A stretch of 64,000 nt of DNA, taken from positions 78,988,001 through 79,052,000 of the forward strand of contig NC_043002.1 of the NCBI RefSeq assembly GCF_006345805.1, written 5' to 3'. The notes beneath the pieces were generated by a model that ran no database searches, was not told the DNA's origin, and saw nothing but the letters and a program-made list of their open reading frames with translations. This document shows, in pieces, positions 17,277-58,735 of this stretch. This stretch comes from Octopus sinensis. Lineage: Eukaryota. The number at the start of each line of letters is the position of its first letter. Within the stretch, counting starts at the first letter, position 1. Position numbers and translations under genes: made by a program.

Positions 17277-17560
17277 CTGCAGAAGAAATACATGGAAATG
17301 GAATTAATCTAGATTAAAGAACCAAGCTGTGTACTTAATACAAGATATTACTGGTATGTATATAGAAACTCCTCATCTCTAAAGCACCCAGTACACACCA
17401 TAAAGTGGTTGGTGGTGTTAGGATGGGCATTCAGCTGCAGAAACCATATTAAAGAAGACATTGGAGCCTGACACAGCTCTGCAGCTCATCAGACCCTGTC
17501 AAATCACTCGACCCATGCCAGCATAGAAAACAGGTATTAAATAAGTAACAAAGTTACTCT

Positions 17561-18580: not shown

Positions 18581-18672
18581 TGAAACCCATACAAAAAAAA
18601 AAAATCAAATATACAGCCTGCTTGCAATAGATTATTGATAATAACAGATTAGTGATAAAGTATTATACTTAC

Positions 18673-18742
18673 ATTATTGACGACAGCCTGTGCTTCGTCC
18701 TTTGTTATAGTATAAGGACTGTTAGCAACACTGGTATTTTCA
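18673..18742 (-). CDS. PPA1: PPA exon 10
   Basis: TTTCAG acceptor, GTAAGT donor; (C)ENTSVANSPYTITKDEAQAVVNN. Confidence 0.92.
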
Positions 18743-18945
18743 CTGAAATTACAATATTTCAGAACATTTACTTGCATTGCTTTAGACTTAATGCAGTTGT
18801 TACAGTGAATGTAAGCACTAATTTCTGGTAGGGAAACCAGAGCATGCAATTATAAAAGTCAAAACAATACAACTATATGCAGGGTAAAAGATGGCACATA
18901 TGTATCTTCTTGCAAGCTGCCTCTCATAAAAATGAAATATCAAAA

Positions 18946-18983
<38 letters not shown>

Positions 18984-20656
18984 TCCAGCATATAATTAAT
19001 AAAAAAAAAAAAAACCCCACCATCAAATGCCCTTCTGCACCTTATATACTAATGATCAGGCTTTGGGTAGGACTCAGTATTAATAATGGATAATACTGGT
19101 GAAAGTGGAGGACAGTAGTGATATTTGGTTGTGGTAAGGTAAAATATTATAACTTAGCCCACCATAATAGAATACCAAACAGCATCAGTCTATATTTTCA
19201 TGGTTCCTATACATGAAAATGTGCGAGACATTCAGTGAGAGGATTTACAATTAGCTGCAGTTTTTGGTTGCTTTTTTTTTTAATAGATTAGGCTTGCTAA
19301 AATCAGGGCGTATATTATATGTCCATGCACCTTACTGCCCAAAAATACAGTATGTGTATATAAAAAGAAAAAAAGGAGATGGGAGGGTTAAGATAGTTCA
19401 GGCAGATATCAATAAAGCACTCAGTTTTAAACAAATTTGGTTTACTATATCCAACAATAAGACACCAGTAAATCTAAGTAAAATACACATCCAACTAATT
19501 TTGGAACACCTTGAAAACGCGTTAGCATGTATATTCAGAAATATTAATTTCAATGATATTTTCTATATCTAATACAATAAAAACAACTGTTAGCTTTGTA
19601 AGGTGAATTCTACAATTAAAGATGTGATTTTCTCTATATGCATTTTTGTTTTTATATATATGTTGATTTACCAGAAGTAACAAATTACAGAACAATACAT
19701 AAATGACAAGTGCCAAGTATCCTTTAATACAAAATGCAATGGCCCATAATCCCAGGATTCTCAAGTCATGTGGAGCCAATCATTTAGTTAATAATCCGAT
19801 CCAGTTTTGTCAAATTACCTTATGGTTGAATATATTTCGAAATAAATGAAAGTTATAAAGAAGCTATTTATTTTTGATTTCTTAAAATCATTGCACAGCA
19901 AATACAAAAAAGGGCCATTTGATGTCTTGGATAGAAAACTCAAAGGCTGCCTGTGGGATCCGAAACCACATCTGTAAATATGACATTCTACCACTGGACC
20001 AAAGCATGCTATTTACCTTAGTTTTTATAGCTTTATCTACATTTTCAGCTAGAGAATTTTCACATTTTTTAAATCCTTATGATAAATATACACACAATCA
20101 AAAATGATGGTGGACCAGTGATGTAAGAAATATTCATTTGAATAAATAATTAGAACTAAATTTTAAAATCTAAAAAAAAAATTTTTTTTAAATCAACACA
20201 GGCGTGACTATGTGATAAACTTGCTACCCAACCACATGGTCCCAGTGTGACACCTTGGGCAAGCATCTACTATAGCCTCGCGTCAACTAGAGTCCTGAAT
20301 GGATTTGGTAGATGGAAACTGAAAGAAGTCCATCATATATGTATATATTTGTGCATGTGTTTGTTCCCCATCACCGCTTGACAACTGGTGCTGATATGTT
20401 TACGTTCACGCAACTTATTGGTTCAGCAAAAGAGACCGATAGGATAAGTACTAGGCTTAAAAATAAGTTCAGGGCCAATTCCTTCAACTAAAACCCTTCA
20501 AGGTGGCACCCCAGCATGGCCACAATCAAATGACAAACTATTGAAAGATAAAAGACTATAAGAAGCTTACAAAGAAACATTGTCATGAAATGGATATGTG
20601 TTGTAAATTCTGTAGAATTTATCAGATTCTCAATAAAACAGAAAATAAATGCATAC

Positions 20657-20742
20657 CATCGGATTCCTTCAGCATCAGTCATTTTATTCATCAGTTTCTC
20701 CCATTGTTCATGAGTCTCAGTAACAATTTTCAGAGCATAAGC
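20657..20742 (-). CDS. PPA1: PPA exon 9
   Basis: TTTATAG acceptor, GTATGC donor; AYALKIVTETHEQWEKLMNKMTDAEGIR. Confidence 0.93.
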
Positions 20743-20900
20743 CTATAAAAAAAAAAAGGCATTGACTAATTGTAACAGTTTATTTTTTTAACATTTTAGC
20801 ATTTAAACCAGCCATATCCAGCCAAAATATTCCACCTGTTTTATGTTCAAACTGGCCAGATATGGCCTCTCACACCAATCCTACTTATCATTCAAAAACT

Positions 20901-21324
20901 GGTACTACTCTGGCATGTAAGCTACAAGGGAAATTACTTTAGGTTACTTTTTAATTTACTTTTCAATTTCTAAAAAAAAAGATGTTGGCCAAAAATTATT
21001 ACAATGCGATCAGCAACAAGACAAAGGCAGTTGTATTTTTACAATAAACCAGCACTAAATTCACATTTAAGGAGAGAGAAAAAAAAAGGTGTCCCTTTGG
21101 CATATGATCTACAATTTAAAGGGAGATTACTTTAGGTTACTTCTTAGTTTTACTTTGTGTTAGTGCTTCTTTCTGTGTGGTCTACATGAGCAAATTTACT
21201 TTGGTGATTGATGTATGTGCATATTTTAATTATTATATGGTTTACTTATACATTTAAAATGCTAAGTATGAAAATAAGTAACCTAAAGTAATCTCCCTTG
21301 TAGATCACACACCAAAGTAGCACC
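20901..21324. mobile_element. Merlin-like MITE nested inside a piggyBac MITE
   Basis: 8-bp TSD CAAAAACT (20893-20900, 21325-21332), GG...CC termini, ~50-bp TIRs, and an extra internal left-TIR copy at 21088. The host piggyBac MITE is split into ~20795-20892 and 21333-21443. Confidence 0.7.
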
Positions 21325-21808
21325 CAAAAACTTAACAGTTACCTCATCAAAATCTTAAAGCTACAAGGTAATGCATGATGAATTCAAAACAATGTGAATA
21401 AATAAGCATTACATTTGACAGAATAATGTGAATGCTGAAAGGTTAAACACCACTTTTAATTAAGACAATTCTGTATAATTGTCACAAAAAACAGCTTTGA
21501 ATAAAATATATCCGGAAAGCTACTTCATATGACAATTATTTAACTTTAGCCTGACCAGGCTATTTGCATGCCAGCATACATCTCTTTCACTGTTTCAATA
21601 ATTGGATATTTACCAGGTTGTGAGAAACAGAGTTATTACTAACTGACAAAGAACAATGCAGAAACACATGCATTCTATGAGCTAATGGTGTCATTCATAG
21701 ACCAAAACAAAATGTGTTTACACAAGTCTAGATGGAGAATTTTCTCCCAGGACTTATCTTGCAGTGATAGGTTTCATCACTGCTAATAACAATTGAAAAT
21801 GTTAAACA

Positions 21809-21966
21809 GGACAAGGAGTGGCTGTGTGGTAAATAGCTTGCTTACCAACCAGATGGTTCCGGGTTCAGTCCCGCTGCCTGACACCTTGGGCAAGTGTCTA
21901 CTATAGCCTTGGACCGACCAAAGCCTTGTGAGTGGATTTGGTAGATGGAAACTAAAAGAAAGCCCG

Positions 21967-22021
<55 letters not shown>

Positions 22022-22235
22022 ATATATATATGTCCCCCCCCCCAACATCACTTGACAACCGTTGATGGTGTGTTTACATCCCCATAACTTAGCAGCTCGG
22101 CAAAAGAGACCGATATAAGTATTAGGCTTACACAGAATAAGTCCTGGGGTCGATTTCTTCGACTAAAGGCAGTGCTCTAGCATGGCTGCATTTAAATGAC
22201 TGAAACAAGTAAAAGAGTAAAGAGTAAAAGAGAGT
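21809..22235 (+). mobile_element. SINE family 1, full length
   Basis: Head, (GT)n microsatellite and tail all present. Confidence 0.85.
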
Positions 22236-23222
22236 AGGACTTTACATGAATATACAATTGTATATATCTGCAGTGAGTCGTATTCAGTTGTGTTTGTATA
22301 GGAAGTGATTCAATCAGATATCCTAAAATAATTACATCATAGGATTGTTTTAGCTACTGGAAATACAGACACAAATACAAATTTACTCTGGTATAATTTT
22401 GCATTCATCAACATTTTTACATTTTTTCTTCAAGCTGTTACAGGATAGATGAAACTTTTTTGAGGCAGGCTTCTTATGGTCAGCTGCTCATGTTGTCAAT
22501 TCCTACTTGTTTTTCAACTGTTTCTTTTATTTCATTGCATTAATTTGCACATGCCTGTAGAATTACAGGACATTCGTTTATTAAGAAATGTATACAATGA
22601 ATCTTTTTTTTTTTTCTTTAGATTGTGAATGGCAGTTTCACATGTCCTCATTAACACAAATATGCATATTATTATACATGTCTTTTTGCCTTGGTAATGT
22701 GATACTTGTAAATGAGTGTTGCTCTCATATAATCAGTGTCATTCATTTTCTATTTTCTATGGAAACCTGTCTGATCATAGGAAACAGTACTTTGCCTGGA
22801 AACAGGTGAGGGTTGGTAGGAGGAAAGAGTCATAGGAAATCTACCTCCCTCAACAAAATTCATCCAACCCACACACGCATGGGAAAGTGAATGTTAGACA
22901 AAGACAAGTGTAAGAACAACAAGCAAGTGTATTAGTTTAACGCTCAGGAAGAATGGAAAAGTCTTTTACATTTTGAGCCTACACTCTTCAACAGACAGGA
23001 TTAAAGGGTAAATAAGAAAATTTTTTTAAATGGAGAGAGAGAAAAAAAGGGTGAAGGGATAGTAAAGATATGGTTGTGTGATTAAGCTGCTTGCTTTCCA
23101 GCCATGTGTAAATAAAAAAGCATTCCATTTGATAAAATAATCTGAATGAGGGATTAAAGCAAGTTATAAAACAGTAACAACTGAAACAAAACATGAAAAA
23201 GTGAAGATGAATGAAGGTTTAC

Positions 23223-23309
23223 CTTGTTTTTAGCTTCCCCATTGAAAGCAAACTGATTTTCTTGTTTTCCATCAGGCACTTTATAGTAACGGAACCATTC
23301 ATAGGTTGC
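23223..23309 (-). CDS. PPA1: PPA exon 8
   Basis: TTACTTAG acceptor, AAG|GTAAAC donor; [29 protein letters not shown]. Confidence 0.95.
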
Positions 23310-23652
23310 CTAAGTAAATAAGGAAATATTAAAGGGAAAAATGTTAAAATTGTCCAAGTGTCTAGCAAAGGTGATGCAAAGGACAAAGATAGTCCTAAAA
23401 TTTTTATTTTAAAGATTAATGACAATTCAGAAACCTTATTATTATTATTAACAGATATATAACTTGACTTATTGGAACAATTCTCAGTAGCCTCTATTTT
23501 AATCCATCTACGCAATGAACAGCTTGTGATCTAAGAGAGATAACTCTGCAATTCAATGCAGTGTTTTCATTAAATTTCTTAGCTACTATAAAGAAAAAAA
23601 TTTAACTTGCAAAAGCCATGAAAAGGAGAAAATCTTGCATGAAAATCGCTTG

Positions 23653-23694
<42 letters not shown>

Positions 23695-24934
23695 TCAGCG
23701 ATTTCAAATCACAACAGGAAATCCATCAAAATTTTTTTAGCGATTTGTTTGACAAAAGACCTCAGACAAGGTGAGGTTAATGTTAACAATGGATTTAAAT
23801 TTCTACAAGAGACGTGTGACTGGAAGAAAAACAGTCAGTTGCACATGTATGCAGGGGCTTGGACAAATTTTAGAAGAAAATTGGCAGTTGCCTTTACATG
23901 CAAGTCTTCTGTTGCTCCTCCCACACACACACACACACACACACACCAAAGTTTATTCAAAGAAAAGGCTGACGACTTTGGTTGATAGTTTGGCAACAGT
24001 GTTAGAATGTTAGTTTTGCTGTTAGAATGCTACAAAAGTCAGAAAGATATAACATCTTGCCTGATCCCCCTCGCAGTTCTGCCAATCTTGTATCCTGGGT
24101 TAAAGCTGCTTTATTGGCCCTAAGAAGGATGAATGACAAAACTGATCTGGGCAGGATTTGAACTCAGAATGCACAGATTTAGAACAAATACTATGAGGCA
24201 TTCAATCCAACTAAGAACTTGGCCAATTCACTGTCTAAATATAGCTAACCACATAGGCTCCAAACAGAAGCTATACCAAAGAAAAGTGATGAAATACGGT
24301 GGAGGTGAGTTGAAAGATGCAATTATCATTGGATTTTTTTTTTTTTTTTAAATACTGGATACTTTGAAAATAACAATGCATTTATTCATTCTTAATACAT
24401 TCTGGCAGATTTGAACATGAATATTTGATCACTGTTGGTTTTCATCATCAGAGAACACATCTTCTCTTTGGATGATGCCTGTATCTAACATGTGATTCAC
24501 TGTGCAATAAGTACACAATATGGTTCAATCATATTGTGTACCTCCGTAACCAAAGCTACCTTAACAGGCTGACGAATTTAAGAGCACAAGTTCTTGTTTA
24601 TAGGAATCTGTAAAGAAATTATTTGCTGATGTTTGTTCATGTCTGCCAAAACAGATAATTCATGGAGTGCATGCAGGAGAGCATGAAACCAAACAATAAT
24701 ATATCAATCCATTCTTAAAACATTCTAACAGACTCAAATGTTAAATAGCTGAATTTCAGAATATTTACTGCCATTATGGGATGCATATTTCTCAACCATA
24801 AATGTTTTATTTAGGCTTGTTTGTATTTCCAATGTGGAATATGTATTCCAAATTCCAATCAACCGAAAAGCACTTTTTCAAATGATTGCTACAGCAATGC
24901 TAAAACGTAATTCCAGAATTAAGTCTTAACTTAC

Positions 24935-24975
24935 CTTTAAAAATCCAGGCATTGATTTTTCTATGTCATCGACAT
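24935..24975 (-). CDS. PPA1: PPA exon 7
   Basis: GTTTTAG acceptor, AAG|GTAAGT donor; (D)VDDIEKSMPGFLK. Confidence 0.92.
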
Positions 24976-26161
24976 CTAAAACACAAAAGAAACAGAGATT
25001 AAGAGTAAGAACAAAAATGTGAACATAGCTGAAATAAACCGAGATTCTTTGCTCTATGCAGAAATTGCAAAAGCTACTCAGAGGTATTGCAAGCTTCTGT
25101 TCTGAATCCATTGCATTATTGGAAATCTTTCCATATTATGAACAGGTATCTCAGAGTCACAAGCATTACACCTGAATGGAGCAGTGAAAACTTAATTAGT
25201 TTTTGCCTGTAGAAGGGTGGCCTCTTGCCAACCAGAGCCACAATTGAGTTAATTTCAATTGGTATGCCTTATCTTGATGGCTTTTTTTTTCAGTTGTCTG
25301 GGCTCTAGATCAATATTCTGCAGGAAATAGCATACCAACCCAATTGGAAAGTAGCGGCAGCTAACTTCATGAAAAATTACACACTCTCCATCTTTAATAC
25401 AAATGTTATGAGAACACTACTCTAATTATAAATGTAATGTCATCTCGACTTTAAAATCACGAGGAGACTTGAAGGAAATTCAGATTGTAATACTGATAGA
25501 TTAACACAACTAAGACAGAATGTTATCAGTATATAAGACTTTTCAGAATTGATAACAAGGCAGATTGAGATGACAAGTGGACTTCAAGGTTAAGCCAGTT
25601 CACTAAGAGATTTATATTTCTAAGTGAACTGAGGCTTGAAGCAATATAGATTTGAATTCACAACATGCCAATGAACAATGTTTAATATGATCTGGAGTGT
25701 CATAACCTCCAGGCAGAACATACAAGCTGAACAATATCACAAAATCATGATGTCAACCTGTGTAGAAATAATACCAGTTAAATAATAGGGTTATTCCACA
25801 TAAGTATTTACCATCTCTTTAAAATAAAGATTATAGGTGTTCTACTAGCAAAAAAAGAAAAAAGAAAAAAACTTATTTTTATGGATCATTTCAATTTTAA
25901 TGCAGACCTCCATCCAAGTCACCATCACTCCAAAAATAGATGTTTTATTTATTTTTTATATATGCAAAATATGTGGGAATATTAATATATGTTCCAACAA
26001 TTTATAAAAATTGTTAAAATTTTTACAATCATCCTCTCAGGCTAGAAACACATGTATTTATAATACACACACAAGTATTAAGTAATCTTTGACTGAAAAA
26101 AAAAAATAATTGGACAGAATACAGTGCCATAAAAATCAGCAAAAATAATTCTAAAACTTAC

Positions 26162-26224
26162 CATTTAAATCACTGGCTAATGGATCGGTAACATCAATTG
26201 CTAGAACTTTCCAATCAGTCTCTC
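26162..26224 (-). CDS. PPA1: PPA exon 6
   Basis: TTTCAG acceptor, G|GTAAGT donor; (G)ETDWKVLAIDVTDPLASDLN. Confidence 0.95.
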
Positions 26225-26401
26225 CTGAAATTAAAGAGATAAAAAATCCATAGTACTTTGCTAGAATTAGGAACAAAGTTCTGTTTGTAAACATGCAAGA
26301 CATGCTACAAAATACAATAAATAAACTACAGAATAAACCTCCTGTAGATTTGACCTGCGACTACATGTGTAGAATAATTAGTTTACAATAGGCTACAATA
26401 T

Positions 26402-26775
26402 TCTTTTATTCTTTTTTAATTTCAGTCATTTGCCTGCAGCCATGCTGGAGCACTGCCTTTGGTCGAACACATCGACCCTAGGACTTATTCTTTGTAAGCC
26501 TAGTACTTATTCTATCAGTCTCTTTTGCCAAACCACTAAGTTACGGGGGAGATAAACACACCAACATCGGTTGACAAGTGATGATGGGAGAGGACAAACA
26601 CAGGCACACAAACACACACATTTATACACACGATGAGCTTCTTTCAGTTTCTGTCTACCAAATCCACTCATAGGGCTTTGGTCGACCTGGGGCTATAGTA
26701 GAAGACACTTGTCCAAGGTGCCACACAGTGGAACTGAACCCGGAACCATGTAAGCAAGCTACTTACCACACAGCT
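26402..26775 (-). mobile_element. SINE family 1, near full length
   Basis: Reverse complement of 21809-22235. Confidence 0.8.
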
Positions 26776-27004
26776 GTGTGCCTTGTATAGTTTACAATAG
26801 TTTAAATAATTAGTTTACAATAAACAATCATAAACTGCTATCTCTGTTTCAACGTTATTACAATGGACAGGAAAAGACAGATCAACTTACAACAGTTTCA
26901 AGTATCAAAAATACTGTCAGCAACAGAATACCAGATCCTCAACTGTATATGTTGAAACTGCACTTGTATAGCTGTCATTATTATGCACTTTGTTAAATCA
27001 GGTA

Positions 27005-27212
27005 ACGTGGCTGATGCCAGCCCCTATGGCTCCCATGCCGGTGGCACGTAAAAAGCACCCACTACAATTGCGGAGTGGTTGACATTAGGAAGGGCATCCA
27101 GCTGTAGAAACACTGCCAGATCAGACTGGAGCCTGGTGCAGCCTCCTGGTTTCCCAGACCCCAGTTGAACCATCCAACCCATGCCAGCATGGAAAACAGA
27201 CGTTAAACAATG
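27005..27212 (+). mobile_element. RTE-like 3' end
   Basis: Same sequence as 1316-1598. Confidence 0.7.
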
Positions 27213-28634
27213 AACACAAGCTGTTTACAATGATATATCTAGTGCATTTAATTCTCATTAGTTTGCATACACAGTATCAGCTAAAATTTGTAGGTTTATT
27301 CTCAAGTGGACTCACTCACAAAAAATTAATATGGTGGTAATTTATACAATAAATAAAAGACAGCATTTTCCTCTGTGTACACACATAGACTCAAGTTTTA
27401 TCTCACTGCATGGCTGGTTTGATTACAGAAGTCACTTGGGTAAGTGACTTCTGAAATCTTGGGTCAACCATTGTCTTGTAAGTGGAACTAGTAAACGGAA
27501 ACCATAAGGAAGCCTGTTGTATATTATATCTATCACCAACATCATTTAACATACATCTTCCATTCTGGCATGGGTTGGATGATTTGACAGGAGCTGGATA
27601 GCCAGAGATGTGCACCAAGCTCTACTGTTCTGGCATGGTGTTTACAGCTGAATGTCCTTATTAACTCCTACCACTTTACAGAGTAGAGTGGATGCTTTTT
27701 ACATGACACCAGCATCAGCAAGGTTGGCTTTGGCCGGCAGGCACACACATACACACTGAATGACCTCAGGAAACTAAATCTTTCAGGCACCTGGCCATAC
27801 TCAAGAAGACCCATACTCTGCAGCAGCAATGTTAAGACTGATCCTTCTGTTGGTGTAAAGCACTCATGACAGTGCCATGTAAAAGCGCCCAGCACACACT
27901 GTAAAGTGGGTAGGCATTAGGAAGGGAATTCAGCTGTAGAAAATTTTGCCAAATCAGACTGGAGTCTGGTGCCTCACAAAAGACCAGCCAACCTATGCCA
28001 GCATGGTAAACATGTTAAAAGATGATATATCTGAAATTAGTGTGGTAGACGAAGTCACCAAAAAAACTGAAAAATGATATGGTTGATCATAGATCTGATC
28101 ATCCACTACTGCTCACCCAGGACACAAGTTCTTATCTCTATTTCAAATCAATACTTTTTAAATACACCCACTCAATCCATTGTTTAGATTTACAATATGT
28201 TTCAAAAGTGTTTATCTTCTCCAGCTGTTGGGAATTTCTCTCTTATTCAGCTTTCTCTGTCATATCACATTATAATTATGTTTGCTTAATCAATATATTC
28301 AATATATTGGCTGTGTAGATCACATCAAAATGTTACAAAGCTACATCTATACAACAGAGGAGATCAAGTAGACCTAAATGAAAGTTCACAATTAAGCTTT
28401 TGTTTCTCAACTATTAAAAAAATTGCCCCCATTACAAGAATGACTCTTCACAATGGCTTAATTGCTACAGCTCTACTGTTCCAGTTTGTTTTCTTTGTTT
28501 ATAATCTACAGATTTATGTGTAATTAAGAAACTTATAAATTTTAATTAATTTTGATAAAAACAAAATTTCAAACTATTCATTGAACAGAAAAACAAATAT
28601 GGATGCAAGACAGGAGAGAAAGAGTAAAATATAC

Positions 28635-28698
28635 CTTCATCAATAAGGCACATCACTCCGAGGACTTTCACTTGGATAACAGCACCCCGTTTGTGGAT
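28635..28698 (-). CDS. PPA1: PPA exon 5
   Basis: CTTCAG acceptor, AAG|GTATAT donor; IHKRGAVIQVKVLGVMCLIDE. Confidence 0.95.
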
Positions 28699-29357
28699 CT
28701 GAAGAGTAGATTAATTATTGAAAATGTGTTAACGCTATAACACCTAAATCATCAATATACATTTAAAAAAAAAATTTAATGGTGTTTTTCTGGAGGTTAA
28801 AGAGGATGTATCTCTTACACACACACACTTCAGAGATTTGTCTGGCAAGTGATTTGATCTGGGACTGTGTGTTGAAATTCAAACAGTGTGGAGGATGCAT
28901 ATTAGCCATTCAAAAATACAGACTCAACTTCTCTAACATTTACTTCTTAGTGTCAAAAAAATGTCACACCAATTGCAATCTGGTCACTGACAGTTCTACT
29001 GCAACTCAGAGTTACCTTTTAAAGTGATCTTATTTTAGACGACTTTAAAACAGTTGAGTTGGTATCATTCAACCAAGAGCAGTCACATGCAGTTTAGTAT
29101 AAAAAAGATTGACCTTTTAGCAATTAAACCAGCCATATCCAGCCAAAATAATCTACTTTATCTTCAAACTAGCCAGATCTAGCCTCTCACTTACCCTACA
29201 ATATTATTCTAAAAATAAACAATTACGTCATTGAAATCTAAAATCTACAAGGTAATACATGACTAATTCAAATCAATATGAATAAATAAGCATTACATTT
29301 AACACAGAAATTTGAATGCTAAAGGGTTAAAATCAATGCCTAATTTTTTCAACTTAC

Positions 29358-29444
29358 CTTTGATCCAATTTCACAAACATCAATTGGGTCAGAATCTCCC
29401 TTAGTGTTTGTATCTGGGGTTACAAAATTTGGGTCTTCCCAGGT
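29358..29444 (-). CDS. PPA1: PPA exon 4
   Basis: TTTGCAG acceptor, AAG|GTAAGT donor; [29 protein letters not shown] (PPase signature). Confidence 0.96.
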
Positions 29445-30295
29445 CTGCAAACGAAAGACAAATGGTATTTGAACAAAGTTAATAAACAGTCATGTCAGGG
29501 GTACAGGTTCAAGTCCTGTAGCCACTTTCTGGCAACTTTTTTGTCTTATAATGGTAAAATACCCAATCTTTCTGTTTTCTCAGCTATACTGCATTCGAAA
29601 TTTACACATAAAATGTCAAAATGTATTATCTTATAATAATTCTGCATGTTCTTCCATTACTTAGCCCGTCTGTAATGCTTCCACAGTGATTGGTTGAAAG
29701 AGGGAGGGGTATGAGAAGGGGAGGGGCACATGTTATGCTAGCATGGGTTGGATGAATACATATTTTTGAGGAATTGTTTTACAACCAGATGCACTTCTTA
29801 TCACTAATCCTTACCTATTTTATATGGAAGGGTTTTCTTTATTATTATTATTATCATTATTATTCTATTTTGCTTCAGAAATAAAGCTACAGGATAATTT
29901 CACTGACTAACATCAATGTCACCCACCATTTTTTATTGGCTCAACACTTTCATGCAAAGGACACAAAATGAGAAGTCACACACACACACACACACAGAGA
30001 GTAAGTGTGTGCCTCATCCTAACAGCGCATAAGTATTATGAGTGTCACCATAATACAGGCAGTGTCCATAGTTTCCAATCTTCTGTCAAAGTATCTCATG
30101 AGGAAATATCCCCTTGTCTGTAAACAGGCGAGGGTTGACAACAGGAAAGGCACTCAATTGTAAAAAATCTTCAACAAATTCCATCTGACTCGTGCATGCA
30201 TGGAGAAGTGGACGTTAAAATGACAATGGTGAAAACTCGTTTTCATGAGAGTTTTACATATAACAGATCAAAACAATAAAATTTCAATGTGTGTT

Positions 30296-30622
30296 GCTGA
30301 GACCCCCTTCGGTCATGACTGACCATGGGATTGCACCTAGAAAGTTACGTTCCCAGGCACAAGTCCAGGCAAGGTTGTTTTTATGGAAGACCAGCAGTCG
30401 CCCATGCATACCGGCCTCCCCTCTCCACACCACCAGTGTTATCCAAGGAAAAGGCAGATACAGCTTGGCACCTGTGACATCACAACTCATTTCTATAGCT
30501 GAGTAAACTGGAGCAACGTGAAAAAGTGTCTTGTTCAAGAACACAACACGCAGCCTGGTCTGGGATTCAAATCACAACCTCACGATCGTAAGCTCGACGC
30601 TCTAACCACTGAGCCATGCACC
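30296..30622 (-). mobile_element. tRNA-derived SINE (family 4) with 13-bp TSD
   Basis: TSD TTCAATGTGTGTT at 30283-30295 and 30623-30635; head GGTGCATGGCTCAGTGGTTAGAGCGTCG...; a related copy lies at ~40600-40830. Confidence 0.85.
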
Positions 30623-32519
30623 TTCAATGTGTGTTATATTTGGTATACTTAAATAAAACTAGGAAATGTTTTAAGAAGACAACATAATTATAATTCCCTG
30701 CATTCCAAGTTTAAATTCTATCAGAATTGTCTTGGACTTTCACTCCTCTGGAGTTGATAAGATAAGCACCACCCCATGTTCTTTTAGCACCATCAAGTTG
30801 TCAAAGTGCACCTGGTGACTTCTTTCATAAGTACTAAGTACCTGTGAAACTTCCATGGTGAGAAAAATAAAATGATTTCCATTTGCTTTCCAGTTTAAAT
30901 TTTCTTTTTTTTTCCCCTAACACTGCTTTGCTAGATACATGCAAGTTCACAACACCTGCCTGGCACAAGGTAAAGAAAAAAATCCTAAAAGAAACACTGC
31001 AATCCATTTTGTCCACTATTCTACCAGTTCTGCCAAACCACTATCCTAGACTGGTACTTTAACCCTTTAGCATTTAAGCTGGCCATATCTGGCTCAAATA
31101 TTCTATTGGTTTTGTTAAAACCGATCAGGTCCAGTCTTTTTCATCTACCTGACAATGTCATTCAAATCAAACAATCACATCATCAAAATCTCAAAGCTAT
31201 GACATAATGCATAATTAATTCAAAACAATGTGAATAAACAAGCATTAAATTTGACAATCTGAACACTAAAAGGTTAATTTTTATTGGCTGGACCCAGAAA
31301 GATGAAAAGCAAAGTTGACATCAATGGGATCTGAACTAAGAACTACAAATACTACAGGGTGTTTTGCCCTACACTTTAATTGGCCTAGTACTGGCATATA
31401 CCAAATAGTAGCTACAAGTCATCATAAGTAGGCAAACATCTTAGAGTACTTACTCTTGGCCTCGCATAATATCAAGGATGTAACAGCTACAGAAAGAGAA
31501 AATTACACAAGTACTTGACTGATATTCATTTTCAGCTAAACAGACAGGAGCAGCATGAAATGAGAGTGCCTGGCTTTGGACAAAGTCTCTTGGTCCAGGA
31601 ACCAAACCCACAACCTTAATGATCGTGAGCCTATCACCCAAATCACTAGGCTATGCATCTTCAAGACAAGCTTATACTAATAAGCTCAATTAATTTAACA
31701 AGATTCCTTTGCTGGAAATGATTAGCATTTTTTTTTAGCATTTTATCTAAAATATCATATCTAAATCACCAAGCTTTAATTAAGTCAATAGTGAACAAGA
31801 GAAGAAGCAAGAACATGTTGAGAGGCAAGAAGCTGTGTTTCAGATCCTGCTACAGCATTATGTACACAGAGCCCTCAAAATCTGCAATTACAGAGATTTA
31901 ACAAAGTACCATACATGATCTAATTCACTAATGTCAACAGTGGCAACACTATAGAATTGATGAGTGTGCAAGGTTGAATTCAGTTATTCTTGCAGGAAAA
32001 ATTATTTACAACAGGTTGGTATTCTTTCCAGGGAAAGAGCTACCTCACCTTCAGGTATATAAAAAAAAAAAAAAAAAAAAAACACTACCCCTACAATCTT
32101 CATGGTTTGGAGAGAAAACAAAACAACTGAAATATATCAGGAATTAAATTCTTCAAATGTTGCTGTATGAACAAAGAACTGCCATAATTTCTCAAACTGA
32201 TGGCAATTTATGAGGCCAAAGATCATAGCACTGAAGACAATGAAAGAACCTCTACAGGATCACTTGAACTGTTATAAATAGCAGTCAAATGAACACACAA
32301 TCTAGAGAAAAAAAAAGCTGGGTGTCACAGCTGGGATGTTTTGTTTTGTTTTTTATATCAGTTCTGCTGTTTAGTTAAAACCAGGGGTTAAAGAACAATT
32401 ATCTCTACTGTCACCACCACCTAGTTCTACATATTTAGCCGACTGGATAGTTAGAAACCTGATATAATGACAATACACCAGATGACAGCAGCTATTCATA
32501 AATTAATAAATACAAGACA

Positions 32520-32584
<65 letters not shown>

Positions 32585-33402
32585 CATAGAAACACAAAAG
32601 ATCAAATAAATCATTCATTCATGAAATCTCCCTATATGCAACAACAATGCATGACATGGCTGACCATTGTTGATTTAATCAATAACTCACTTTGTTTAAT
32701 TGAAAAACCCCACCCACAAAAAAAAATCCACTAGATTTAATGGAACTGAAGCAAACATTAAACCAAGTTGAATTAATTGTAATCTATAAAATTCAGATAT
32801 AAATTCAAAAGCCAAGGGATTGAATCTTGAAGATTGCAGTTTAAGTAGCTTTAATGAGATGAATGAAACGACTTAGATAAATTAGGAGAAAGTAAGCAAT
32901 AACATAAATTAAAGGGAGGTACACAAAAGAGAAATAGGAAAACTGAATCAGCTTCAGTGAACAACAATTCAAAGGTTACAGAGCTATTGATTTCATCATC
33001 ATCATCATTTAACATATTTTCTATGCCGACATGGGCTGGGCAGTTTGAACCGAGCTGGTAAGCACGGGAGCTGGACCTGGTTCCAGTCTGATTTAGCTGG
33101 ATTTCTCAGCTAGATGCCTTTCCTAATGCCAACAATTTTAGAGTGTGGTGGGTGCTTTTTATAAAATAAAATCACTCTCGTCATTCTGTTTTAAAACATT
33201 CAATACTAATCCCTGGTTCTATGATAGAAATTTCCAGTTTTGAAAAGGTGATATAAATTAAAACCTCCCTTCATAATTTCTATGTCTGCAAACATAACAC
33301 TTTGTATGACAGTAACATTGTTTAGGATTAGCAAGTGATGCTATAAAAAGTTTAAAAAAAAAAAAAAAAAAAACCCCACGCACAATGGACTTTTTAGTTT
33401 CC

Positions 33403-33631
33403 TATTTCTTTACTGCTCACAAGGGGCTACACACAGAGGGGACAAACAAGGACTGACAAACGGATTAAGTCAAATGTATCGACCCCAGTGCGCAACTGGT
33501 ACTTAATGTATCGACCCCGAAAAGGATGAAAGGCAAAGTCGACCTCAGCGGAATTTGAAATCAGAACGTAGCGGCAGACGAAATACCAAGCATTTCGCCC
33601 AGCGTGTTAACAATTCTGCCAGCTCGCCGCC
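33403..33631 (-). mobile_element. SINE family 2 with 12-bp TSD, nested in a family 1 SINE
   Basis: TSD TTTTTAGTTTCC at 33391-33402 and 33632-33643. Confidence 0.85.
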
Positions 33632-33830
33632 TTTTTAGTTTCCATCAAGTGAATCCACTCAAAAGGCTATGGTCAGCCTGGAGCAACAACTGCTGACACT
33701 TGCCCAAGGTGCCAAGCACTGAGATTGAAAGCAAAAAAAAAAAGAGGGTGCAAAGCAAACTTCATAATCACACAGCTATACCTGCATCTGTTATACACTC
33801 ACATAAACTTATATAGAGAGGTATGTGTAG

Positions 33831-33873
<43 letters not shown>

Positions 33874-35149
33874 GTACATGTTTACACATGTACGTAAAGA
33901 AAAGAAACCTGGAGAAAAGAGACAGCCAATTTATAAAAGACACAACAGCTCTCTTTCTGAATAGAGTTAAGGACACAAGTTAATACTGAACAATCAATCG
34001 ATAAGGGTTGAGCATAACGAGGGATGAATCAATGCAATGGAATTAAGTCAGTTTAATCCTTTATCGGTCAATATTTTATGAAAGACTAATGAGGAGATTG
34101 CAAGGTGAATAAGAACAGAGTATAAAATAGATGAAAGGGACAAAGGAGATTGAATATGTAAAGACTGCATTATTAATAATGAGCTAAAGTTTATAATAAG
34201 TCATAAATAGCTTATTGATGAATGTCTTATAATAAAGCTCTTTGGATCTTCTAATAGCTACTTAACATTTCTTCTTTAATATAAGTGTACATATGAATTG
34301 ACCGAGTCACAAGGGCATTGGTTTTCGTTCTGGCTCTCTGTATCGAGTGCAAATATTGGGGGGGGGGGTCAACATTGCCTTTGAGTTTTTAAAAAACGAA
34401 ATACCTGTACTGTGATTGATTCATCACTATCCCTCCTGATCTCTTTTCCTTTACCCTCCACCCCGGTTTTTTTCCCCTCAATCTCTCTCCACCTTTATTC
34501 CTCCCCTCCCCATCTCTAAAACATCATTCTTCCTGTATGACCTGGCAGATCAGTTCAGGGTTATGTCACCAGTGTCTCAGTGCAGACAACTTGTGTTCAC
34601 ACAAGCATGTGCTACTGTCTCCTTGCCTTGACAGCACAAAAGTTGTAAAACAAGTGTCACCTTCGTGCAAACAGTATCCTTCATTGCCAGTCTTGTGAGA
34701 CATGTCTGGTCATAAGGGGAACTATTACCTTACTAGGAAACAAATGAGGGCTGGTGACAAGGAAGGGTATCCAGCCATAGAAAATGCACCCCAACAAATT
34801 CCATCCGAAACATGAAATGTGGACACATTAAAATGAAAAATTTTATTTTACTTTTTTGATTTCTTCCTATCCCATTTTAACAAGTAGACAAAAGTTTAAA
34901 GATTTGACCATTTGAGAGTATTTCTATATTTCTAGTTTTTACATCCTATTCTTGCTTGCTGAAAGGTATTACTAAAAGTGTTGATATATCATGAAGGGCT
35001 CTAGCTGCAAAAAGCTATCTGAAAAAGTCCTGTTCAATCCATGCAGCATAGAAAAGCAAATGTAAAAACCATGATAATGATGAAATTGTTTTACATCTTT
35101 TTTTCTATGTTGGCATGTATTGTATGGAGAGTTGCTAGACTATCTGTTT

Positions 35150-35470
35150 CAATCATTTGACTGTGGCCATGCTGGAGCACCACCTTTAGTCAAGCAAATC
35201 GACCCCGATACTTATTCTTTGTAAGCCTAGTACTTATTCTATCAGTGTCTTTTGCCGAACCGCTAAGTTACGGGGACATAAACACACCAGCATCAGTTGT
35301 CAAGCAATGCTAGAGGGACAAACACAGACACACAAACATATACATATATATACAAGGGGCTTCTTTCAGTTTCCGTCTACCAAATCCACTCAAGGATTTG
35401 GTCAGCCGAGACTGAACCCAGAACTATGTGGTTGGGAAGCAAGTTTCTTACCACAATCAAGCCTGTGCCT
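35150..35470 (-). mobile_element. SINE family 1
   Basis: Reverse complement of head and tail. Confidence 0.75.
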
Positions 35471-35898
35471 ATATATATCATTGTTTAATGTCTATTTTCC
35501 ATGCTGACACGGGTTAGATGGTTTGAGAGGAGCTGTTCCTGTGATCATGATTCAAGAAGATATACAGCAGTATGCTAAAGATCGGACATAATCTCTCGTG
35601 GACAAGAAATGTAAAGTTTATAAACAACACAAACACTGTAATTTAATAGCTTTCAATGTGATACCTGTTAAACAGAAATTATTTAATCATAAGTTGTCTA
35701 ATCATAAGAGAAATTATGCTAAATACAACTATATTGAAAACCTTTTCCTCCTGGCTATATTGGTGAGTAGAAGCTTTAACAAATTTTATCCTGAAAATCA
35801 CCTGCGTAAATTACACAGGTGTGCAAATTACAAGGGTTTTAAGGTATATGTGCATTACCACCATCAAATGACAAGTAAAAAAATAAAAGAAAATCTAT

Positions 35899-35936
<38 letters not shown>

Positions 35937-36549
35937 CAGGCTCCTTTTTCCCCCATTTCTTTCCATTCACAAACACTGATTGCACCAATGCTATAATAGG
36001 AGACACTTGCCAAAGAGCTGTGCAGTGGGATTGAACCCAAGACCATGTGAGACAAACTTCTTAATCATACAGTCATGCCTGCACCCCGTTTGCATTGATT
36101 TGCAATTGTAATCAATGAGTTTTAGTAAAATAGCTGTAACATTTATCTGCACATTATATTGGTTTCAAATTTTAGCACAGGGTCAGTAACTTCGGGGTGG
36201 GTTAAGTCGATTACATCGACCACAGTGCTCAACTGGTACTTATTTTATCAACCCTGAAAGGATGAAAGGGTAAGCTGACATCGGCAGAATTTGAACTCAA
36301 AACAAAGCCAGCTGACAACACGAAGACAAATGTTGCCTAGCATTTTGCTCAGCATGCTAATAATTCTGCCAGCTTGTTACCTTATATGTACATTATACTG
36401 GTATTTACCAAATGAAATCTCAATATTCATGCAATGAGAAATTACAAGCAGACTAATAAAAAGAGAGAGGGTGGGGTTCAGAGTGAGGACATGTCATTTT
36501 AAAACTTAAAATGGTGTAATGAAATAAAGAGTTTTTTTTTCCCATTTAC

Positions 36550-36669
36550 CTGTGGAAGTGCTCCATAGTTCCAGATATAACCATGGTGAGGGAAAAGGTT
36601 CTTCACAAATCTCACTTTGCCATTCTTAACATCTTGTTTGATGGGATTCATCATGTCCTCTTTGCAGAT
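36550..36669 (-). CDS. PPA1: PPA exon 3
   Basis: TTTATAG acceptor, CAG|GTAAAT donor; [40 protein letters not shown]. Confidence 0.96.
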
Positions 36670-37540
36670 CTATAAAAAAAAAATAAATTTGTAAACTTTT
36701 TAAGAGAAGGTAACAATTTTTTTTCCAATCTTCCATGGAAGGATGTCTGGTCATAGAGCAAATATTACTTTGCTCGAAAACAGTTCCAAGTAGACAACAG
36801 AAAGAGCATACAGCTGTAGAAAAACAGCTTCAAGGAATTCTGTCTGACCTATACAAGCATGGAGAAGCAGACATTTATACAATATTATATACCTGCTTTT
36901 ATATACTAGCATCGGTTGTACAGGTCTTCGAAATCCTAGTTTTTTTTTTTTTAGAGTCTGTTTATATAGAGCTAGCACTCACTTCAAGGAGTCATGGACA
37001 TCATATCATGATTTCATAGTTGGCATGGTTTTTATAACTGGATGCCTTTTCTAACACCAAGAATATTATAGTTTAGATGTACATTTTACTAGGGCACCAA
37101 TATGACAATTCAACAAAAATTCACAAACATAAACAGGCATGTGGTTAACAGGCTTTGCTTTGCAAAGCATGTAATTTCAGGTTCAGTCCCACTGCATGGC
37201 ACCTTGGGCAAGTACCTTCTACTACAGTCCCAGTATAACCAATACCTTGTGAGTGAATTAGGTGGATGGAAACTGCATGGAAGCCTGTCAAATGTGTTTT
37301 TACATTTGTTCCCTCACCATCACTGCTTGACAATCAGTGTTGGTTTGTATACATCCTCATAACTTAGTTCCATAAAAGTGACCAATAAAATAAGTCCCAG
37401 ACTTGAAAAGTACTGGGGTCGGTACCCAAGTACAACTGTAGTCAAATGACTGAAACAGATATAACTCAAAAAAGACAAAATATGATAAATGCCTAAAACA
37501 AAATCTAGTTGAGGGAAGAAAATTCTATAAATCAACCTAC

Positions 37541-37656
37541 CTCCATCTTGTGGTTTGTCCATCGTGGAATTTCAACAACCATATTAAACTCAGTCTTGCT
37601 TGTATTTGAATATAAGGGAATATCATGGAATGGTGAAATGATGCCATTAGGACCAC
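37541..37656 (-). CDS. PPA1: PPA exon 2
   Basis: TTTTTCAG acceptor, GAG|GTAGGT donor; (S)[38 protein letters not shown]. Confidence 0.96.
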
Positions 37657-57574: not shown

Positions 57575-57638
57575 TGTAGTATATTTTGTAGTCTTTGGTG
57601 TTGGGGGTTCCTTTCTCGGTGATTTTGTACGTAGACAT
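57575..57638 (-). CDS. PPA1: PPA exon 1, short (cytosolic-type) start
   Basis: ATG at 57638; MSTYKITEKGTPNTKDYKIYY plus 1 nt; A|GTAAGT donor; aligns to the N-terminus of cytosolic PPases. Confidence 0.93.
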
Positions 57639-58200
57639 AGTTGCTGTTTGCAAAGAAAATAGCCGTTGCTGCACACCGCAAGAGAAGAGCGAAAGTGAAT
57701 GAAGCTGATGTAATAACTGCAGCAATGGACTTAGCGAAGTTAGTCGGTAATTGCTAATCACACAAGCAGGACTCGATCTGGTGGCGATATTACCGGCAAC
57801 GAGTAGAGGTGCGAGTAGACGATTTGGTGTGCACCACCAATGGCAAATACTACTGCCGCTGTGTATTCTTCTTCTTATATCAATACTGCTGCTGTCGACG
57901 TTACAAAAGCTTCTACCACCACTACCACCTCCGTTGCTTAGATTATTATTATAACACGAAGCACGACGTTTATGAACTCCTACTCCCGCGCTTTTTTGTT
58001 CGACAGCTTTCAGAACCCGCCACCTCGCAAGCGTATTAATATTAATTGATTGACATCGGTTAACAATGGCAGAGGTGGGGGTCTTCGCGAAGCGTCCACT
58101 GAACCTGAATACACCAGGAAGAAAGCAAAGACGGCTGCCTGTAAAAGAAGGGTGGAAATGTTGCATCTCTGTAACGTACAAAACACAGCGACCTCTGCGT
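57600..58200. promoter_or_regulatory. CpG-rich 5' region/promoter of PPA
   Basis: Visibly high CpG and GC content around exon 1 relative to the gene body (qualitative; not computed). Confidence 0.5.
57639..58181 (-). CDS. PPA1: In-frame 181-aa N-terminal extension of PPA (putative mitochondrial targeting isoform)
   Basis: 543 nt without a stop, in frame with exon 1; only 4 acidic residues; rich in R/S/L; ends QQRLFSLQTAT-M. Confidence 0.6.
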
Positions 58201-58735
58201 CACAAATCCACACACACATCCATACACATACTTATATAAACACACATATCATGTGTGTATATATATATATATATTTATTTAATTGGCAGAAATTACAAAT
58301 TTAAAAACAATACAGAGCTATATATATATAATTAAGCCTTATATACTTATATTTATGTGTATGTATATAAACACACGTGTATAAATATGCTTTAATTCAC
58401 AAGGACATCCACAGTGAATATTATACCATAACAAGGTGACACCTGGTGTCCGAGTTCATTTACTAAGATGCAGTAACTAGTGTTTGATCACGGACACCTG
58501 CCCAGAATAACTTAATGGGTCAAATGGTTATTTGGCATTAGCAAGAGTTGGGTTGAGCAGACCAAATTATATATTTAATTTCCTTGGACAATCTATTGTT
58601 TTATTTGAATTTCTTTGATGTTTTATCAATAAACGTGATCTGACAGCTATTTTGATCTTACAATAAGGAAATTTTGAATAAAAGTATGATTATAATGACG
58701 GGATTTTGTTTATGTATATATTATCTTTAAATCTG

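What the first reader, a model, noticed from the sequence alone, without database searches (positions are those of the whole stretch)
57575..58181. One PPA gene, two starts: a 181-aa presequence-like extension in exon 1
Seen: 543 nt of stop-free frame upstream of the conserved Met, with ATGs only at codons 1 and 6. The extension has 4 acidic residues, many Arg/Ser/Leu, a Gly/Ser/Asn-rich middle, and ends QQRLFSLQTAT. Established: vertebrates use separate PPA1 (cytosol) and PPA2 (mitochondria); R-x-(F/L)-S resembles MPP cleavage motifs. Inference: alternative TSS or leaky scanning yields both isoforms from one gene. The extension is unusually long for a presequence and may have an extra function.
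Basis: partly seen in the sequence, partly recalled or inferred. Interest (0 to 1): 0.7.

Follow-up and report, generated by a model that had tools for sequence, protein, structure and literature searches.

The report
Octopus pyrophosphatase gene with two starts
The first exon of this mollusc pyrophosphatase gene has two in-frame start codons that probably give a mitochondrial and a cytosolic enzyme from one gene, a layout shared with snails, oysters, sea urchins and human PPA2, and only the 176-residue length of the extension is unusual.

Summary
On the minus strand, 561 nt of stop-free frame (58199-57639) run into the conserved Met (ATG 57638) of a family I inorganic pyrophosphatase (PF00719). 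One detail is wrong: "codon 1" at 58181 is TTG, so the only upstream in-frame ATG is 58166, giving a 176-aa extension.

The frame is not open by chance:
- The composition-based probability is 6e-5, and it is the longest open run in the window.
- It shows codon periodicity (P=0.0006).
- It stays open in the one relative found (88% nt identity), where all four indels are multiples of 3.

The sense strand between the two ATGs is almost ATG-free: 1 and 0 ATGs against about 6-7 expected. This is the largest ATG gap on that strand.

Oyster, Biomphalaria, Dreissena, Patella and Diadema have the same exon 1. A first ATG in weak context is followed by a 34-54-aa basic extension with no out-of-frame ATG, then the conserved Met. 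Octopus, oyster and snail share RLFS just before it. Human PPA2 has been shown to use both starts.

This is therefore a new member of a known kind, with an extension 3-5 times longer than in the others. The extension has no homologues, no predicted fold and no detectable amino-acid constraint. Transcription starts, translation and targeting remain untested.

The parts
58200..58202 (-). In-frame TGA that closes the open frame 11 codons 5' of ATG1; conserved at the same place in the relative L001
58167..58199 (-). 33-nt leader directly 5' of ATG1, 94% identical in the relative against 72% further upstream. It is ATG-free, and five sense ATGs cluster just upstream at 58219-58252. Likely a very short 5'UTR or transcription-start region (inference).
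58164..58166 (-). ATG1, the only in-frame upstream ATG. Context acagagATGC (-3 G); in the relative acagaaATGA (-3 A).
57639..58166 (-). 176-codon N-terminal extension: stop-free, 3-periodic, single copy. S 25, L 20, R 16; 3 acidic and 20 basic residues. Identity to the relative rises from 66% aa / 84% nt (residues 1-55) to 85% aa / 92% nt (residues 116-176).
58042..58056 (-). The only other sense ATG between the two starts. It is out of frame and opens a 4-codon mini-ORF (MSIN*). It is absent in the relative.
57810..57821 (-). RLLA (residues 116-119), which fits the R-3 processing pattern R-x-[FYL]-[SA]; conserved in the relative
57654..57665 (-). RLFS (residues 168-171), fits the R-3 pattern, 5 residues before Met2. 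The same tetrapeptide sits 6 residues before Met2 in oyster and Biomphalaria.
57636..57638 (-). ATG2, the conserved Met. It aligns with residue 1 of human PPA1 and with the start of short forms in other animals. Context gcaactATGT (-3 A).
57575..57638 (-). First 21 codons plus 1 nt of the mature enzyme (MSTYKITEKGTPNTKDYKIYY). The phase-1 donor GT at 57574-57573 is at the same position as in snail, mussel, limpet and sea urchin.
15373..37656 (-). Remaining exons of the pyrophosphatase gene: 37541-37656, 36550-36669, 29358-29444, 28635-28698, 26162-26224, 24935-24975, 23223-23309, 20657-20742, 18673-18742, and a last exon 15373-15401 ending in TAA. One small exon between 18673 and 15401 was not located. 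PF00719 E=4.4e-50.

Best explanation
Exon 1 of a single family I soluble inorganic pyrophosphatase gene carries two in-frame initiation codons. Initiation at ATG1 (58166) would give an enzyme with a 176-residue basic, acid-poor, unstructured N-terminal extension. By homology of position with the 34-54-residue extensions of other invertebrate pyrophosphatases and with the human PPA2 presequence, this extension would direct the enzyme into mitochondria. It would probably be removed at or near the conserved RLF|S site a few residues before Met2. Initiation at ATG2 (57638) would give the cytosolic/nuclear enzyme.

Ribosomes would reach ATG2 either by scanning past ATG1 or on mRNAs that start just downstream of ATG1. 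Scanning past ATG1 would be helped by a very short 5' leader. Either route requires the 528 nt between the starts to be free of AUGs, as observed.

The proximal ~60 codons look like the ancestral molluscan presequence. The distal ~115 codons look like an octopod-lineage addition, most simply former leader sequence taken into the frame when the start moved upstream. In that part only the open frame and the absence of AUGs are maintained.

Shown: the open, periodic, conserved frame; the ATG desert; the shared exon architecture; enzyme family membership. Inferred: translation from ATG1, mitochondrial import, the cleavage site, the way ATG2 is reached, and the origin of the extra length.
For: Open frame:
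- P=5.9e-5 by composition, and it is the longest open run in the window.
- Codon-position base periodicity gives chi2 28.3, P=0.0006 against a null conditioned on being stop-free. Only 1 of 31 other open runs of at least 100 codons is more periodic.
- A stop lies 11 codons 5' of ATG1 in both species.

Relative L001 (88.3% nt identity over the extension):
- The frame is open despite 60 substitutions (14% expected under neutral simulation).
- All four indels are 3, 3, 6 and 3 nt, against 1, 3, 4 and 14 nt in the non-coding flanks.

ATG desert:
- The window has 1 sense ATG between the starts where dinucleotide shuffles expect 6.7 (P=0.004).
- The relative has 0 where 6.0 are expected (P=0.0002).
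- The desert is strand-specific, with 7 antisense ATGs over the same stretch.
- The 418-nt gap is the largest on this strand of the 64-kb window.
- The single intervening ATG opens a 4-codon mini-ORF.

Comparative evidence:
- Long (322-346 aa) and short (~290 aa) forms from one locus occur in Dreissena, Biomphalaria, Patella, Bradybaena, Artemia, Diadema and a Capitella-like sequence.
- An oyster mRNA contig carries an upstream in-frame ATG with a 54-aa extension.
- In four of these genomes both ATGs lie in one exon that ends at the same phase-1 donor as in octopus.
- In the five outgroups there are no out-of-frame ATGs between the starts: 1 in-frame ATG is seen against 10.4 ATGs expected. ATG1 always has a pyrimidine at -3 and ATG2 a purine.
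- RLFS is shared by octopus, oyster and Biomphalaria just before Met2.

Other:
- Human PPA2: the annotated form is mitochondrial, and the form starting at MALYHTEERG is non-mitochondrial (PMC12718117 Table S2).
- Very short 5'UTRs promote leaky scanning (PMC13219423 abstract).
- The first 40 residues have 5 basic and 0 acidic residues and a maximum hydrophobic moment of 0.54, within the range of the outgroup extensions.
Against: - There are no transcript, ribosome-profiling, proteomic or localisation data, and no dedicated targeting predictor was available.
- dN/dS is 0.65 (0.38-1.17), the same as the wrong-frame controls (0.57, 0.79). Substitutions fall 19/18/23 by codon position.
- The N-terminal 55 residues, which should carry the import signal, diverge at the intron rate: 84% nt identity against 83.6% for the intron.
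- Octopus ATG1 has a purine at -3, unlike the weak first ATG of all five outgroups, so simple leaky scanning is less obviously built in.
- 176 residues is far longer than usual presequences.
- Acid-poor, basic composition is common in translations of non-coding DNA in this window (21 of 223 controls).
- The ATG-free zone runs on 270 nt into intron 1, which the model does not explain.
- Only one relative was found, so conservation rests on a single pair.
Confidence: 0.6

Rival explanations
1. The extension is translated from ATG1 but most of it is a tolerated passenger. The frame is kept open only so that ribosomes that start at ATG1 still make active enzyme instead of terminating in a long upstream ORF that would block ATG2. 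The long form need not be mitochondrial, and mitochondrial pyrophosphatase could come from elsewhere.
For: There is no amino-acid-level constraint. The distal 55 residues diverge at the intron rate. There is no fold, domain or homologue. The composition is not distinctive against non-coding controls.
Against: The position, the exon structure and the RLFS motif are shared with extensions that other genomes annotate as N-termini of long forms, and with the experimentally mitochondrial human PPA2 presequence. The proximal third is clearly more conserved: 92% nt, 85% aa, no indels. Every animal examined here keeps a long form.
Confidence: 0.2
2. The true presequence is only the proximal ~40-60 codons. 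It would be initiated at a non-AUG codon or from a processed or alternative transcript. The distal open frame and ATG1 would be leader sequence with no protein role.
For: Conservation rises steadily toward ATG2. Outgroup extensions are 34-54 aa. The R-3-type motifs RLLA and RLFS both lie in the proximal third.
Against: The ~115 distal codons being open by chance has P of about 0.003 at the local stop frequency (derived). Two of the four 3n indels, and the 3-periodicity, involve the distal part. ATG1, the stop 11 codons before it and the 33-nt leader are conserved. No in-frame CTG, GTG or ACG with a purine at -3 and G at +4 was found.
Confidence: 0.1
3. The region is an untranslated 5'UTR of an mRNA that starts downstream of ATG1. 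The open frame is a coincidence and the ATG desert reflects ordinary selection against upstream AUGs.
For: The ATG desert is what a long 5'UTR under selection looks like. Substitutions are spread evenly over codon positions.
Against: An open frame of 187 codons has P=5.9e-5. Periodicity has P=0.0006. All four indels are multiples of 3. The frame is retained in the relative. Homologous exons in five other animals encode an extension at exactly this place.
Confidence: 0.05

Closest known systems
Human PPA2 (mitochondrial inorganic pyrophosphatase), annotated and N-terminally truncated isoforms from alternative start codons (PMC12718117)
   Same: Same enzyme family. There are two in-frame Mets flanking a basic presequence, and the second Met (MALYHTEERG) aligns with octopus Met2 (MSTYKITEKG). 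The long form is mitochondrial and the short form non-mitochondrial in GFP reporters.
   Different: The human presequence is 31 residues, the octopus extension 176. Vertebrates also have a separate cytosolic paralogue, PPA1. There are no sequence similarities between the two extensions.
Long and short pyrophosphatase forms of other invertebrates (Biomphalaria XP_055876679.1, Dreissena XP_052262051.1, Patella XP_050392087.1, Diadema XP_072165034.1, Artemia XP_065578130.1; oyster mRNA contigs)
   Same: The exon 1 layout is the same: ATG1, then a basic extension with no out-of-frame ATG, then ATG2, then ~21 codons and a phase-1 donor. RLFS a few residues before Met2 is shared with oyster and Biomphalaria.
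   Different: Their extensions are 34-54 aa and their ATG1 has a pyrimidine at -3. The octopus extension is 3-5 times longer and its ATG1 has a purine at -3. The distal two thirds have no counterpart.
Dual-localised enzymes made by leaky scanning or alternative transcription starts (TRNT1/CCA1, yeast Pif1)
   Same: The logic is the same: an upstream AUG adds a mitochondrial signal and a downstream in-frame AUG gives the cytosolic or nuclear form. Both routes, leaky scanning and alternative transcription initiation, are documented (PMC12718117; PMC11229318).
   Different: These are unrelated proteins. Their spacers between the two AUGs are tens of codons, not 176.
Paralogue solution: yeast IPP1/PPA2 and vertebrate PPA1/PPA2
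   Same: The same need is met, pyrophosphatase activity in both cytosol and mitochondria (own knowledge of the families).
   Different: Two genes instead of one. Whether octopus also has a second gene could not be checked from one window.
Acidocalcisomal pyrophosphatases of trypanosomatids (PDB 5cuy, 414 aa)
   Same: A family I pyrophosphatase core with a long N-terminal addition.
   Different: Their addition is a folded domain. The octopus extension has no predicted fold and no similarity to it.

Membership tests
Family I soluble inorganic pyrophosphatase (Pfam PF00719) | Full-length match to the Pyrophosphatase domain above the curated cut-off | tested here: met
   Spliced product of exons 1b-10: PF00719 E=4.4e-50, 169.9 bits against a cut-off of 23.5, profile positions 1-153 of 153. 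Best PDB relatives are eukaryotic pyrophosphatases at E=1e-100 or better.
Family I soluble inorganic pyrophosphatase (Pfam PF00719) | Active-site signature D-x-D-P-x-D | tested here: met
   [12 protein letters not shown] is encoded at 29358-29444. The signature itself is recalled from PROSITE, not retrieved here.
Dual-start gene giving mitochondrial and cytosolic isoforms (alternative start codon selection) | Two in-frame AUGs in one exon with no stop between them, the second at the conserved start of the mature enzyme | tested here: met
   ATG 58166 and ATG 57638, 176 codons apart, with no stop. Met2 aligns with residue 1 of human PPA1.
Dual-start gene giving mitochondrial and cytosolic isoforms (alternative start codon selection) | No intervening AUGs that would trap scanning ribosomes | tested here: met
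   1 ATG in the window (a 4-codon mini-ORF) and 0 in the relative, against 6-7 expected. The depletion is strand-specific and the most extreme in the window.
Dual-start gene giving mitochondrial and cytosolic isoforms (alternative start codon selection) | Weak initiation context at the first AUG (for the leaky-scanning route) | tested here: inconclusive
   Octopus has -3 G and +4 C; the relative has -3 A and +4 A. The purine at -3 is unlike the pyrimidine in all five outgroups, and there is no G at +4. A very short leader could compensate, but the transcription start is unknown.
Dual-start gene giving mitochondrial and cytosolic isoforms (alternative start codon selection) | Both protein isoforms are made and localise differently | not testable with these tools
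   There are no RNA, ribosome-profiling or proteome data for this species. The window's own exon-1 ORF is not on record in the assembly collection.
Cleavable matrix-targeting presequence | N-terminal, basic, nearly free of acidic residues, able to form an amphipathic helix | tested here: inconclusive
   The first 55 residues have no acidic residue in the window, but the relative has a D at position 18. Maximum hydrophobic moment is 0.54 and 0.37, within the range of the outgroups. The composition is not distinctive against non-coding controls. TargetP and MitoFates were not available.
Cleavable matrix-targeting presequence | Typical length of roughly 15-60 residues | tested here: not met
   176 residues, against 34-54 in seven other animals and 31 in human PPA2.
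Cleavable matrix-targeting presequence | Arginine at -2 or -3 of a processing site close to the mature N-terminus | tested here: met
   RLF|S at residues 168-171 and RLL|A at 116-119, both conserved in the relative. RLFS is also present in oyster and Biomphalaria. Actual cleavage is untested.

The most novel reading that the evidence does not exclude
The octopod lineage has added about 115 residues of new sequence in front of the ancestral pyrophosphatase presequence and maintains it as coding. The frame and an AUG-free state would be preserved over 528 nt because the added part does something of its own. It could be a second sorting or retention signal (a run of internal presequence-like segments, or a submitochondrial or other address), or it could set the ratio of the two isoforms. 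It would then be one of the longest natural AUG-free coding spacers used for dual initiation, and a case of leader sequence becoming protein.
Probability: 0.15. Interest if true: 0.55.

Novelty: new member of a known kind. Interest (0 to 1): 0.33.

Why it matters
It shows that cephalopods, like other invertebrates examined here, probably supply mitochondria and cytosol with pyrophosphatase from one gene through two in-frame starts. This layout reaches from sea urchins to molluscs and survives in human PPA2, so it most likely predates the vertebrate PPA1/PPA2 duplication.

For genome annotation, it argues that gene models for this locus should carry both a long and a short product.

The octopus case is also a convenient natural example of three things: how far apart two such starts can drift, how selection can keep a frame open and AUG-free while the encoded residues change almost freely, and how leader sequence may be drawn into a coding region. 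None of this overturns current understanding.

Tried and rejected
- Homologues of the extension. Two word-indexed searches (single sequence and profile) found only one cluster, P0001, a genomic contig of a related species. A full HMMER scan of 1.84 billion representatives found nothing. Pfam found nothing above noise, and PDB matches begin at residue 171 or later.
- Structure. AlphaFold2 on the exon-1 product with a 4-sequence alignment gave mean pLDDT 28. This shows no sign of a fold, but the alignment is too shallow to prove disorder.
- dN/dS. The value of 0.65 does not differ from the wrong-frame controls. One pair at 12% divergence has little power, so it was not used as evidence either way.
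- Amino-acid composition as evidence for a presequence. Rejected as weak after comparison with 223 non-coding open runs.
- Origin from a repeat or mobile element. The extension is single copy in the window, and only the microsatellite 5' of it matches elsewhere.
- Transcripts of this or a related cephalopod. The best pyrophosphatase hits were only 76-80% identical and come from other molluscs. The window's own ORF is not on record.
- UniProt K1Q3F4 (oyster, 426 aa). It looked like a long form but is an internal duplication in the gene model.
- NRF-1-type sites (GCGCAYGCGC). They are visible 5' of ATG1 in Patella and Diadema, but none was found within 1.3 kb of octopus ATG1 or in L001.
- Splice-acceptor-like sequences just 5' of ATG1 (ttacag|AG) and of ATG2 (tttgcaaacag|CAACT). 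These were considered as an alternative-splicing route. They cannot be tested, and the ATG desert disfavours a route that bypasses the extension.

Full report
WHAT IS THERE

The finding lies in exon 1 of a gene on the minus strand. The spliced product of the exons I could place has a full-length match to the inorganic pyrophosphatase domain PF00719 (E=4.4e-50). Those exons are 57575-57638, 37541-37656, 36550-36669, 29358-29444, 28635-28698, 26162-26224, 24935-24975, 23223-23309, 20657-20742, 18673-18742 and 15373-15401. Its closest solved relatives are eukaryotic family I pyrophosphatases. Residue 1 of human PPA1 aligns with the Met encoded at 57638, so that is the conserved start.

Exon 1 ends at 57575 with a phase-1 GT donor. 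Upstream of the conserved Met the frame is open for 187 codons, back to a TGA at 58202-58200.

The codon at 58181 is TTG, not ATG. The ORF tool lists it only because it accepts bacterial alternative starts. The single upstream in-frame ATG is 58166, so an AUG-initiated extension is 176 residues.

IS THE OPEN FRAME MORE THAN CHANCE?

Yes, on several counts.
- At the local base composition a stop is expected every 20 codons. The probability of 187 codons without one is 5.9e-5, and none of 20000 shuffles was open.
- The other two frames have 7 and 14 stops.
- The run is the longest of 7695 open runs in all six frames of the window.
- Base composition differs by codon position (chi2 28.3). That is P=0.0006 against simulated sequences already conditioned on being stop-free. 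Only one of 31 other open runs of at least 100 codons in the window is more periodic.
- The extension is single copy in the window.

THE ONE RELATIVE

Three protein searches with the extension found a single cluster, P0001. These were a word-indexed search, a profile search, and a full scan of 1.84 billion representatives. P0001 comes from a 1.6-kb genomic contig of an unnamed sequencing run, L001. It reads through the same donor into the same intron, so it is the orthologous exon of a related species.

Nucleotide identity between the two species, by region:

| Region | Identity |
|---|---|
| Extension | 88.3% |
| Intron 1 | 83.6% |
| Mature part of exon 1 | 95% |
| 33 nt directly 5' of ATG1 | 94% |
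| Further upstream | 72% |

- The frame, ATG1 and the stop 11 codons before it are all kept.
- All four indels in the extension are 3, 3, 6 and 3 nt, against 1, 3, 4 and 14 nt in the flanks.
- If 60 random substitutions are placed on the window sequence, the frame stays open in 14% of trials.

The amino-acid sequence itself shows no detectable constraint. Substitutions fall 19/18/23 on the three codon positions. dN/dS is 0.65 (0.38-1.17), no different from the two wrong frames.

Conservation rises toward the conserved Met:

| Residues | aa identity | nt identity |
|---|---|---|
| 1-55 | 66% | 84% |
| 56-115 | 79% | 88% |
| 116-176 | 85% | 92% |

The last block has no indels.

AN ATG DESERT

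Between ATG1 and ATG2 the sense strand of the window has one ATG in any frame, at 58056. Dinucleotide shuffles expect 6.7 (P=0.004). The relative has none where 6.0 are expected (P=0.0002).

- The one ATG opens a 4-codon mini-ORF, MSIN*.
- The depletion is strand-specific, because the antisense strand has 7 ATGs over the same stretch.
- ATGs occur every 48 nt on average in the window. The 418-nt gap ending at ATG2 is the largest on the minus strand, and no other 913-nt stretch on either strand is as ATG-poor.
- Five sense ATGs cluster at 58219-58252, just 5' of the conserved leader. Any mRNA that carries ATG1 as its first AUG must therefore start within about 50 nt of it.
- Under neutral substitution the relative would have kept zero ATGs in only 1.8% of trials.

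A frame that must stay open, combined with a stretch that must stay free of AUGs, is what is expected if the region is both translated from ATG1 and scanned through to reach ATG2.

One loose end remains. The ATG-free zone continues 270 nt into intron 1 in both species. I cannot explain this.

THE SAME LAYOUT IN OTHER ANIMALS

The best database matches to the mature enzyme are ~290-aa proteins of other molluscs, 76-80% identical. No cephalopod entries were present.

In the 90% identity clusters of those proteins, long forms of 322-346 aa sit beside the short ones. This holds for Dreissena, Biomphalaria, Patella, Bradybaena, Artemia, Diadema and a Capitella-like sequence. Each long form adds a 34-54-residue basic, acid-poor stretch directly in front of the conserved Met. 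An oyster mRNA contig (L004) has an upstream in-frame ATG, preceded by a stop, that adds 54 residues.

Genomic DNA of Biomphalaria, Dreissena, Patella and Diadema shows both ATGs in one exon. That exon ends about 21 codons after Met2 at the same phase-1 donor as in octopus.

In the five outgroups:
- there is no out-of-frame ATG between the two starts (one in-frame ATG seen against 10.4 ATGs expected);
- the first ATG always has a pyrimidine at -3;
- the second always has a purine at -3.

This is the textbook arrangement for leaky scanning.

Octopus (QQRLFSLQTAT|M), oyster (NERLFSSSSQVK|M) and Biomphalaria (ATARLFSAKKKLK|M) share RLFS five or six residues before Met2. RLFS fits the R-3 pattern of the mitochondrial processing peptidase; the pattern itself is from my own knowledge.

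In human PPA2, a published localisation screen found the annotated form mitochondrial. The form starting at MALYHTEERG, the Met that aligns with octopus Met2, was non-mitochondrial (PMC12718117, Table S2). The same paper documents leaky scanning, alternative transcription starts and paralogue duplication as interchangeable routes to dual localisation.

From memory, not checked here, the single Drosophila gene Nurf-38 also has a long and a short isoform.

HOW IT MOST LIKELY WORKS

I conclude that this is the cephalopod version of an old two-start pyrophosphatase gene. ATG1 would give a form that is imported into mitochondria and trimmed near RLF|S. ATG2 would give the cytosolic form.

The proximal ~60 codons behave like the ancestral presequence. 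They are better conserved, have no indels, and carry the shared motif. The distal ~115 codons are peculiar to this lineage. They have no homologue anywhere, no domain and no predicted fold (mean pLDDT 28, on a shallow alignment). They change at close to the intron rate while staying open and AUG-free. The simplest history is that the start moved upstream and former leader sequence was taken into the frame.

How ribosomes reach ATG2 is open. Unlike the outgroups, octopus ATG1 has a purine at -3, which argues against easy leaky scanning. Two things could compensate:
- the leader can be at most about 50 nt, and very short leaders are reported to promote leaky scanning (PMC13219423);
- transcription starts just downstream of ATG1 would give the same sequence signature.

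A route that bypasses the extension altogether is disfavoured, because it would not need the ATG desert. Such a route could be a start site near ATG2, or use of the acceptor-like sequence just 5' of ATG2.

CAVEATS

- Nothing here shows that the long form is made or where it goes.
- The presequence-like composition is weak evidence. 21 of 223 translations of non-coding open runs in this AT-rich window are as acid-poor, and 37 are as positively charged.
- The N-terminal 55 residues, which should carry the import signal, are the least conserved.
- Conservation rests on one species pair.
- A second pyrophosphatase gene elsewhere in the genome cannot be excluded.

VERDICT

Only the length of the extension and the size of the AUG-free spacer stand out. 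There is no support for an extra function.

Noticed in passing
window 58731-59580: An ~850-bp near-perfect palindrome lies about 560 bp 5' of ATG1. The outer arms (58731-58920 and 59391-59580) are 97% complementary, and the centre is in a (TGTA)n/(CATA)n microsatellite. It could be a foldback-type element or an assembly artefact.
   Followed up: partly
window 57305-57574 (intron 1, sense = minus strand): The sense-strand ATG-free zone continues 270 nt into intron 1: 0 sense against 5 antisense ATGs. In the relative L001 there is none for 320 nt after ATG2. This is not explained by the two-start model.
   Followed up: partly
window 3163-3558 (+): A 132-codon open run with the strongest codon periodicity in the window (chi2 48.8). 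It is Ser/Thr-rich with a His run and has no Pfam match above cut-off. It may be an exon of a neighbouring plus-strand gene.
   Followed up: partly
window 37920-38417 (+) and 4801-5217 (+): Two long open runs translate to nearly the same peptide-like string (...FNVRFP.HGL.GFDRGLGS.GL.QAPV.SGSVSTAGCPS...). An interspersed repeat is therefore present both in a pyrophosphatase intron and downstream of the gene.
   Followed up: no
P0122 (UniProt K1Q3F4, Magallana gigas): The 426-aa oyster 'inorganic pyrophosphatase' entry contains an internal duplication of about 130 residues of the enzyme. This is probably a gene-model artefact rather than a long isoform.
   Followed up: yes
L011 ~960-985 and L012 ~970-990: Palindromic GCGCAYGCGC motifs (TGCGCATGCGCA in Patella, TGCGCACGCGCA in Diadema) lie 15-40 nt 5' of ATG1 and resemble NRF-1 sites. 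None was found near octopus ATG1.
   Followed up: partly
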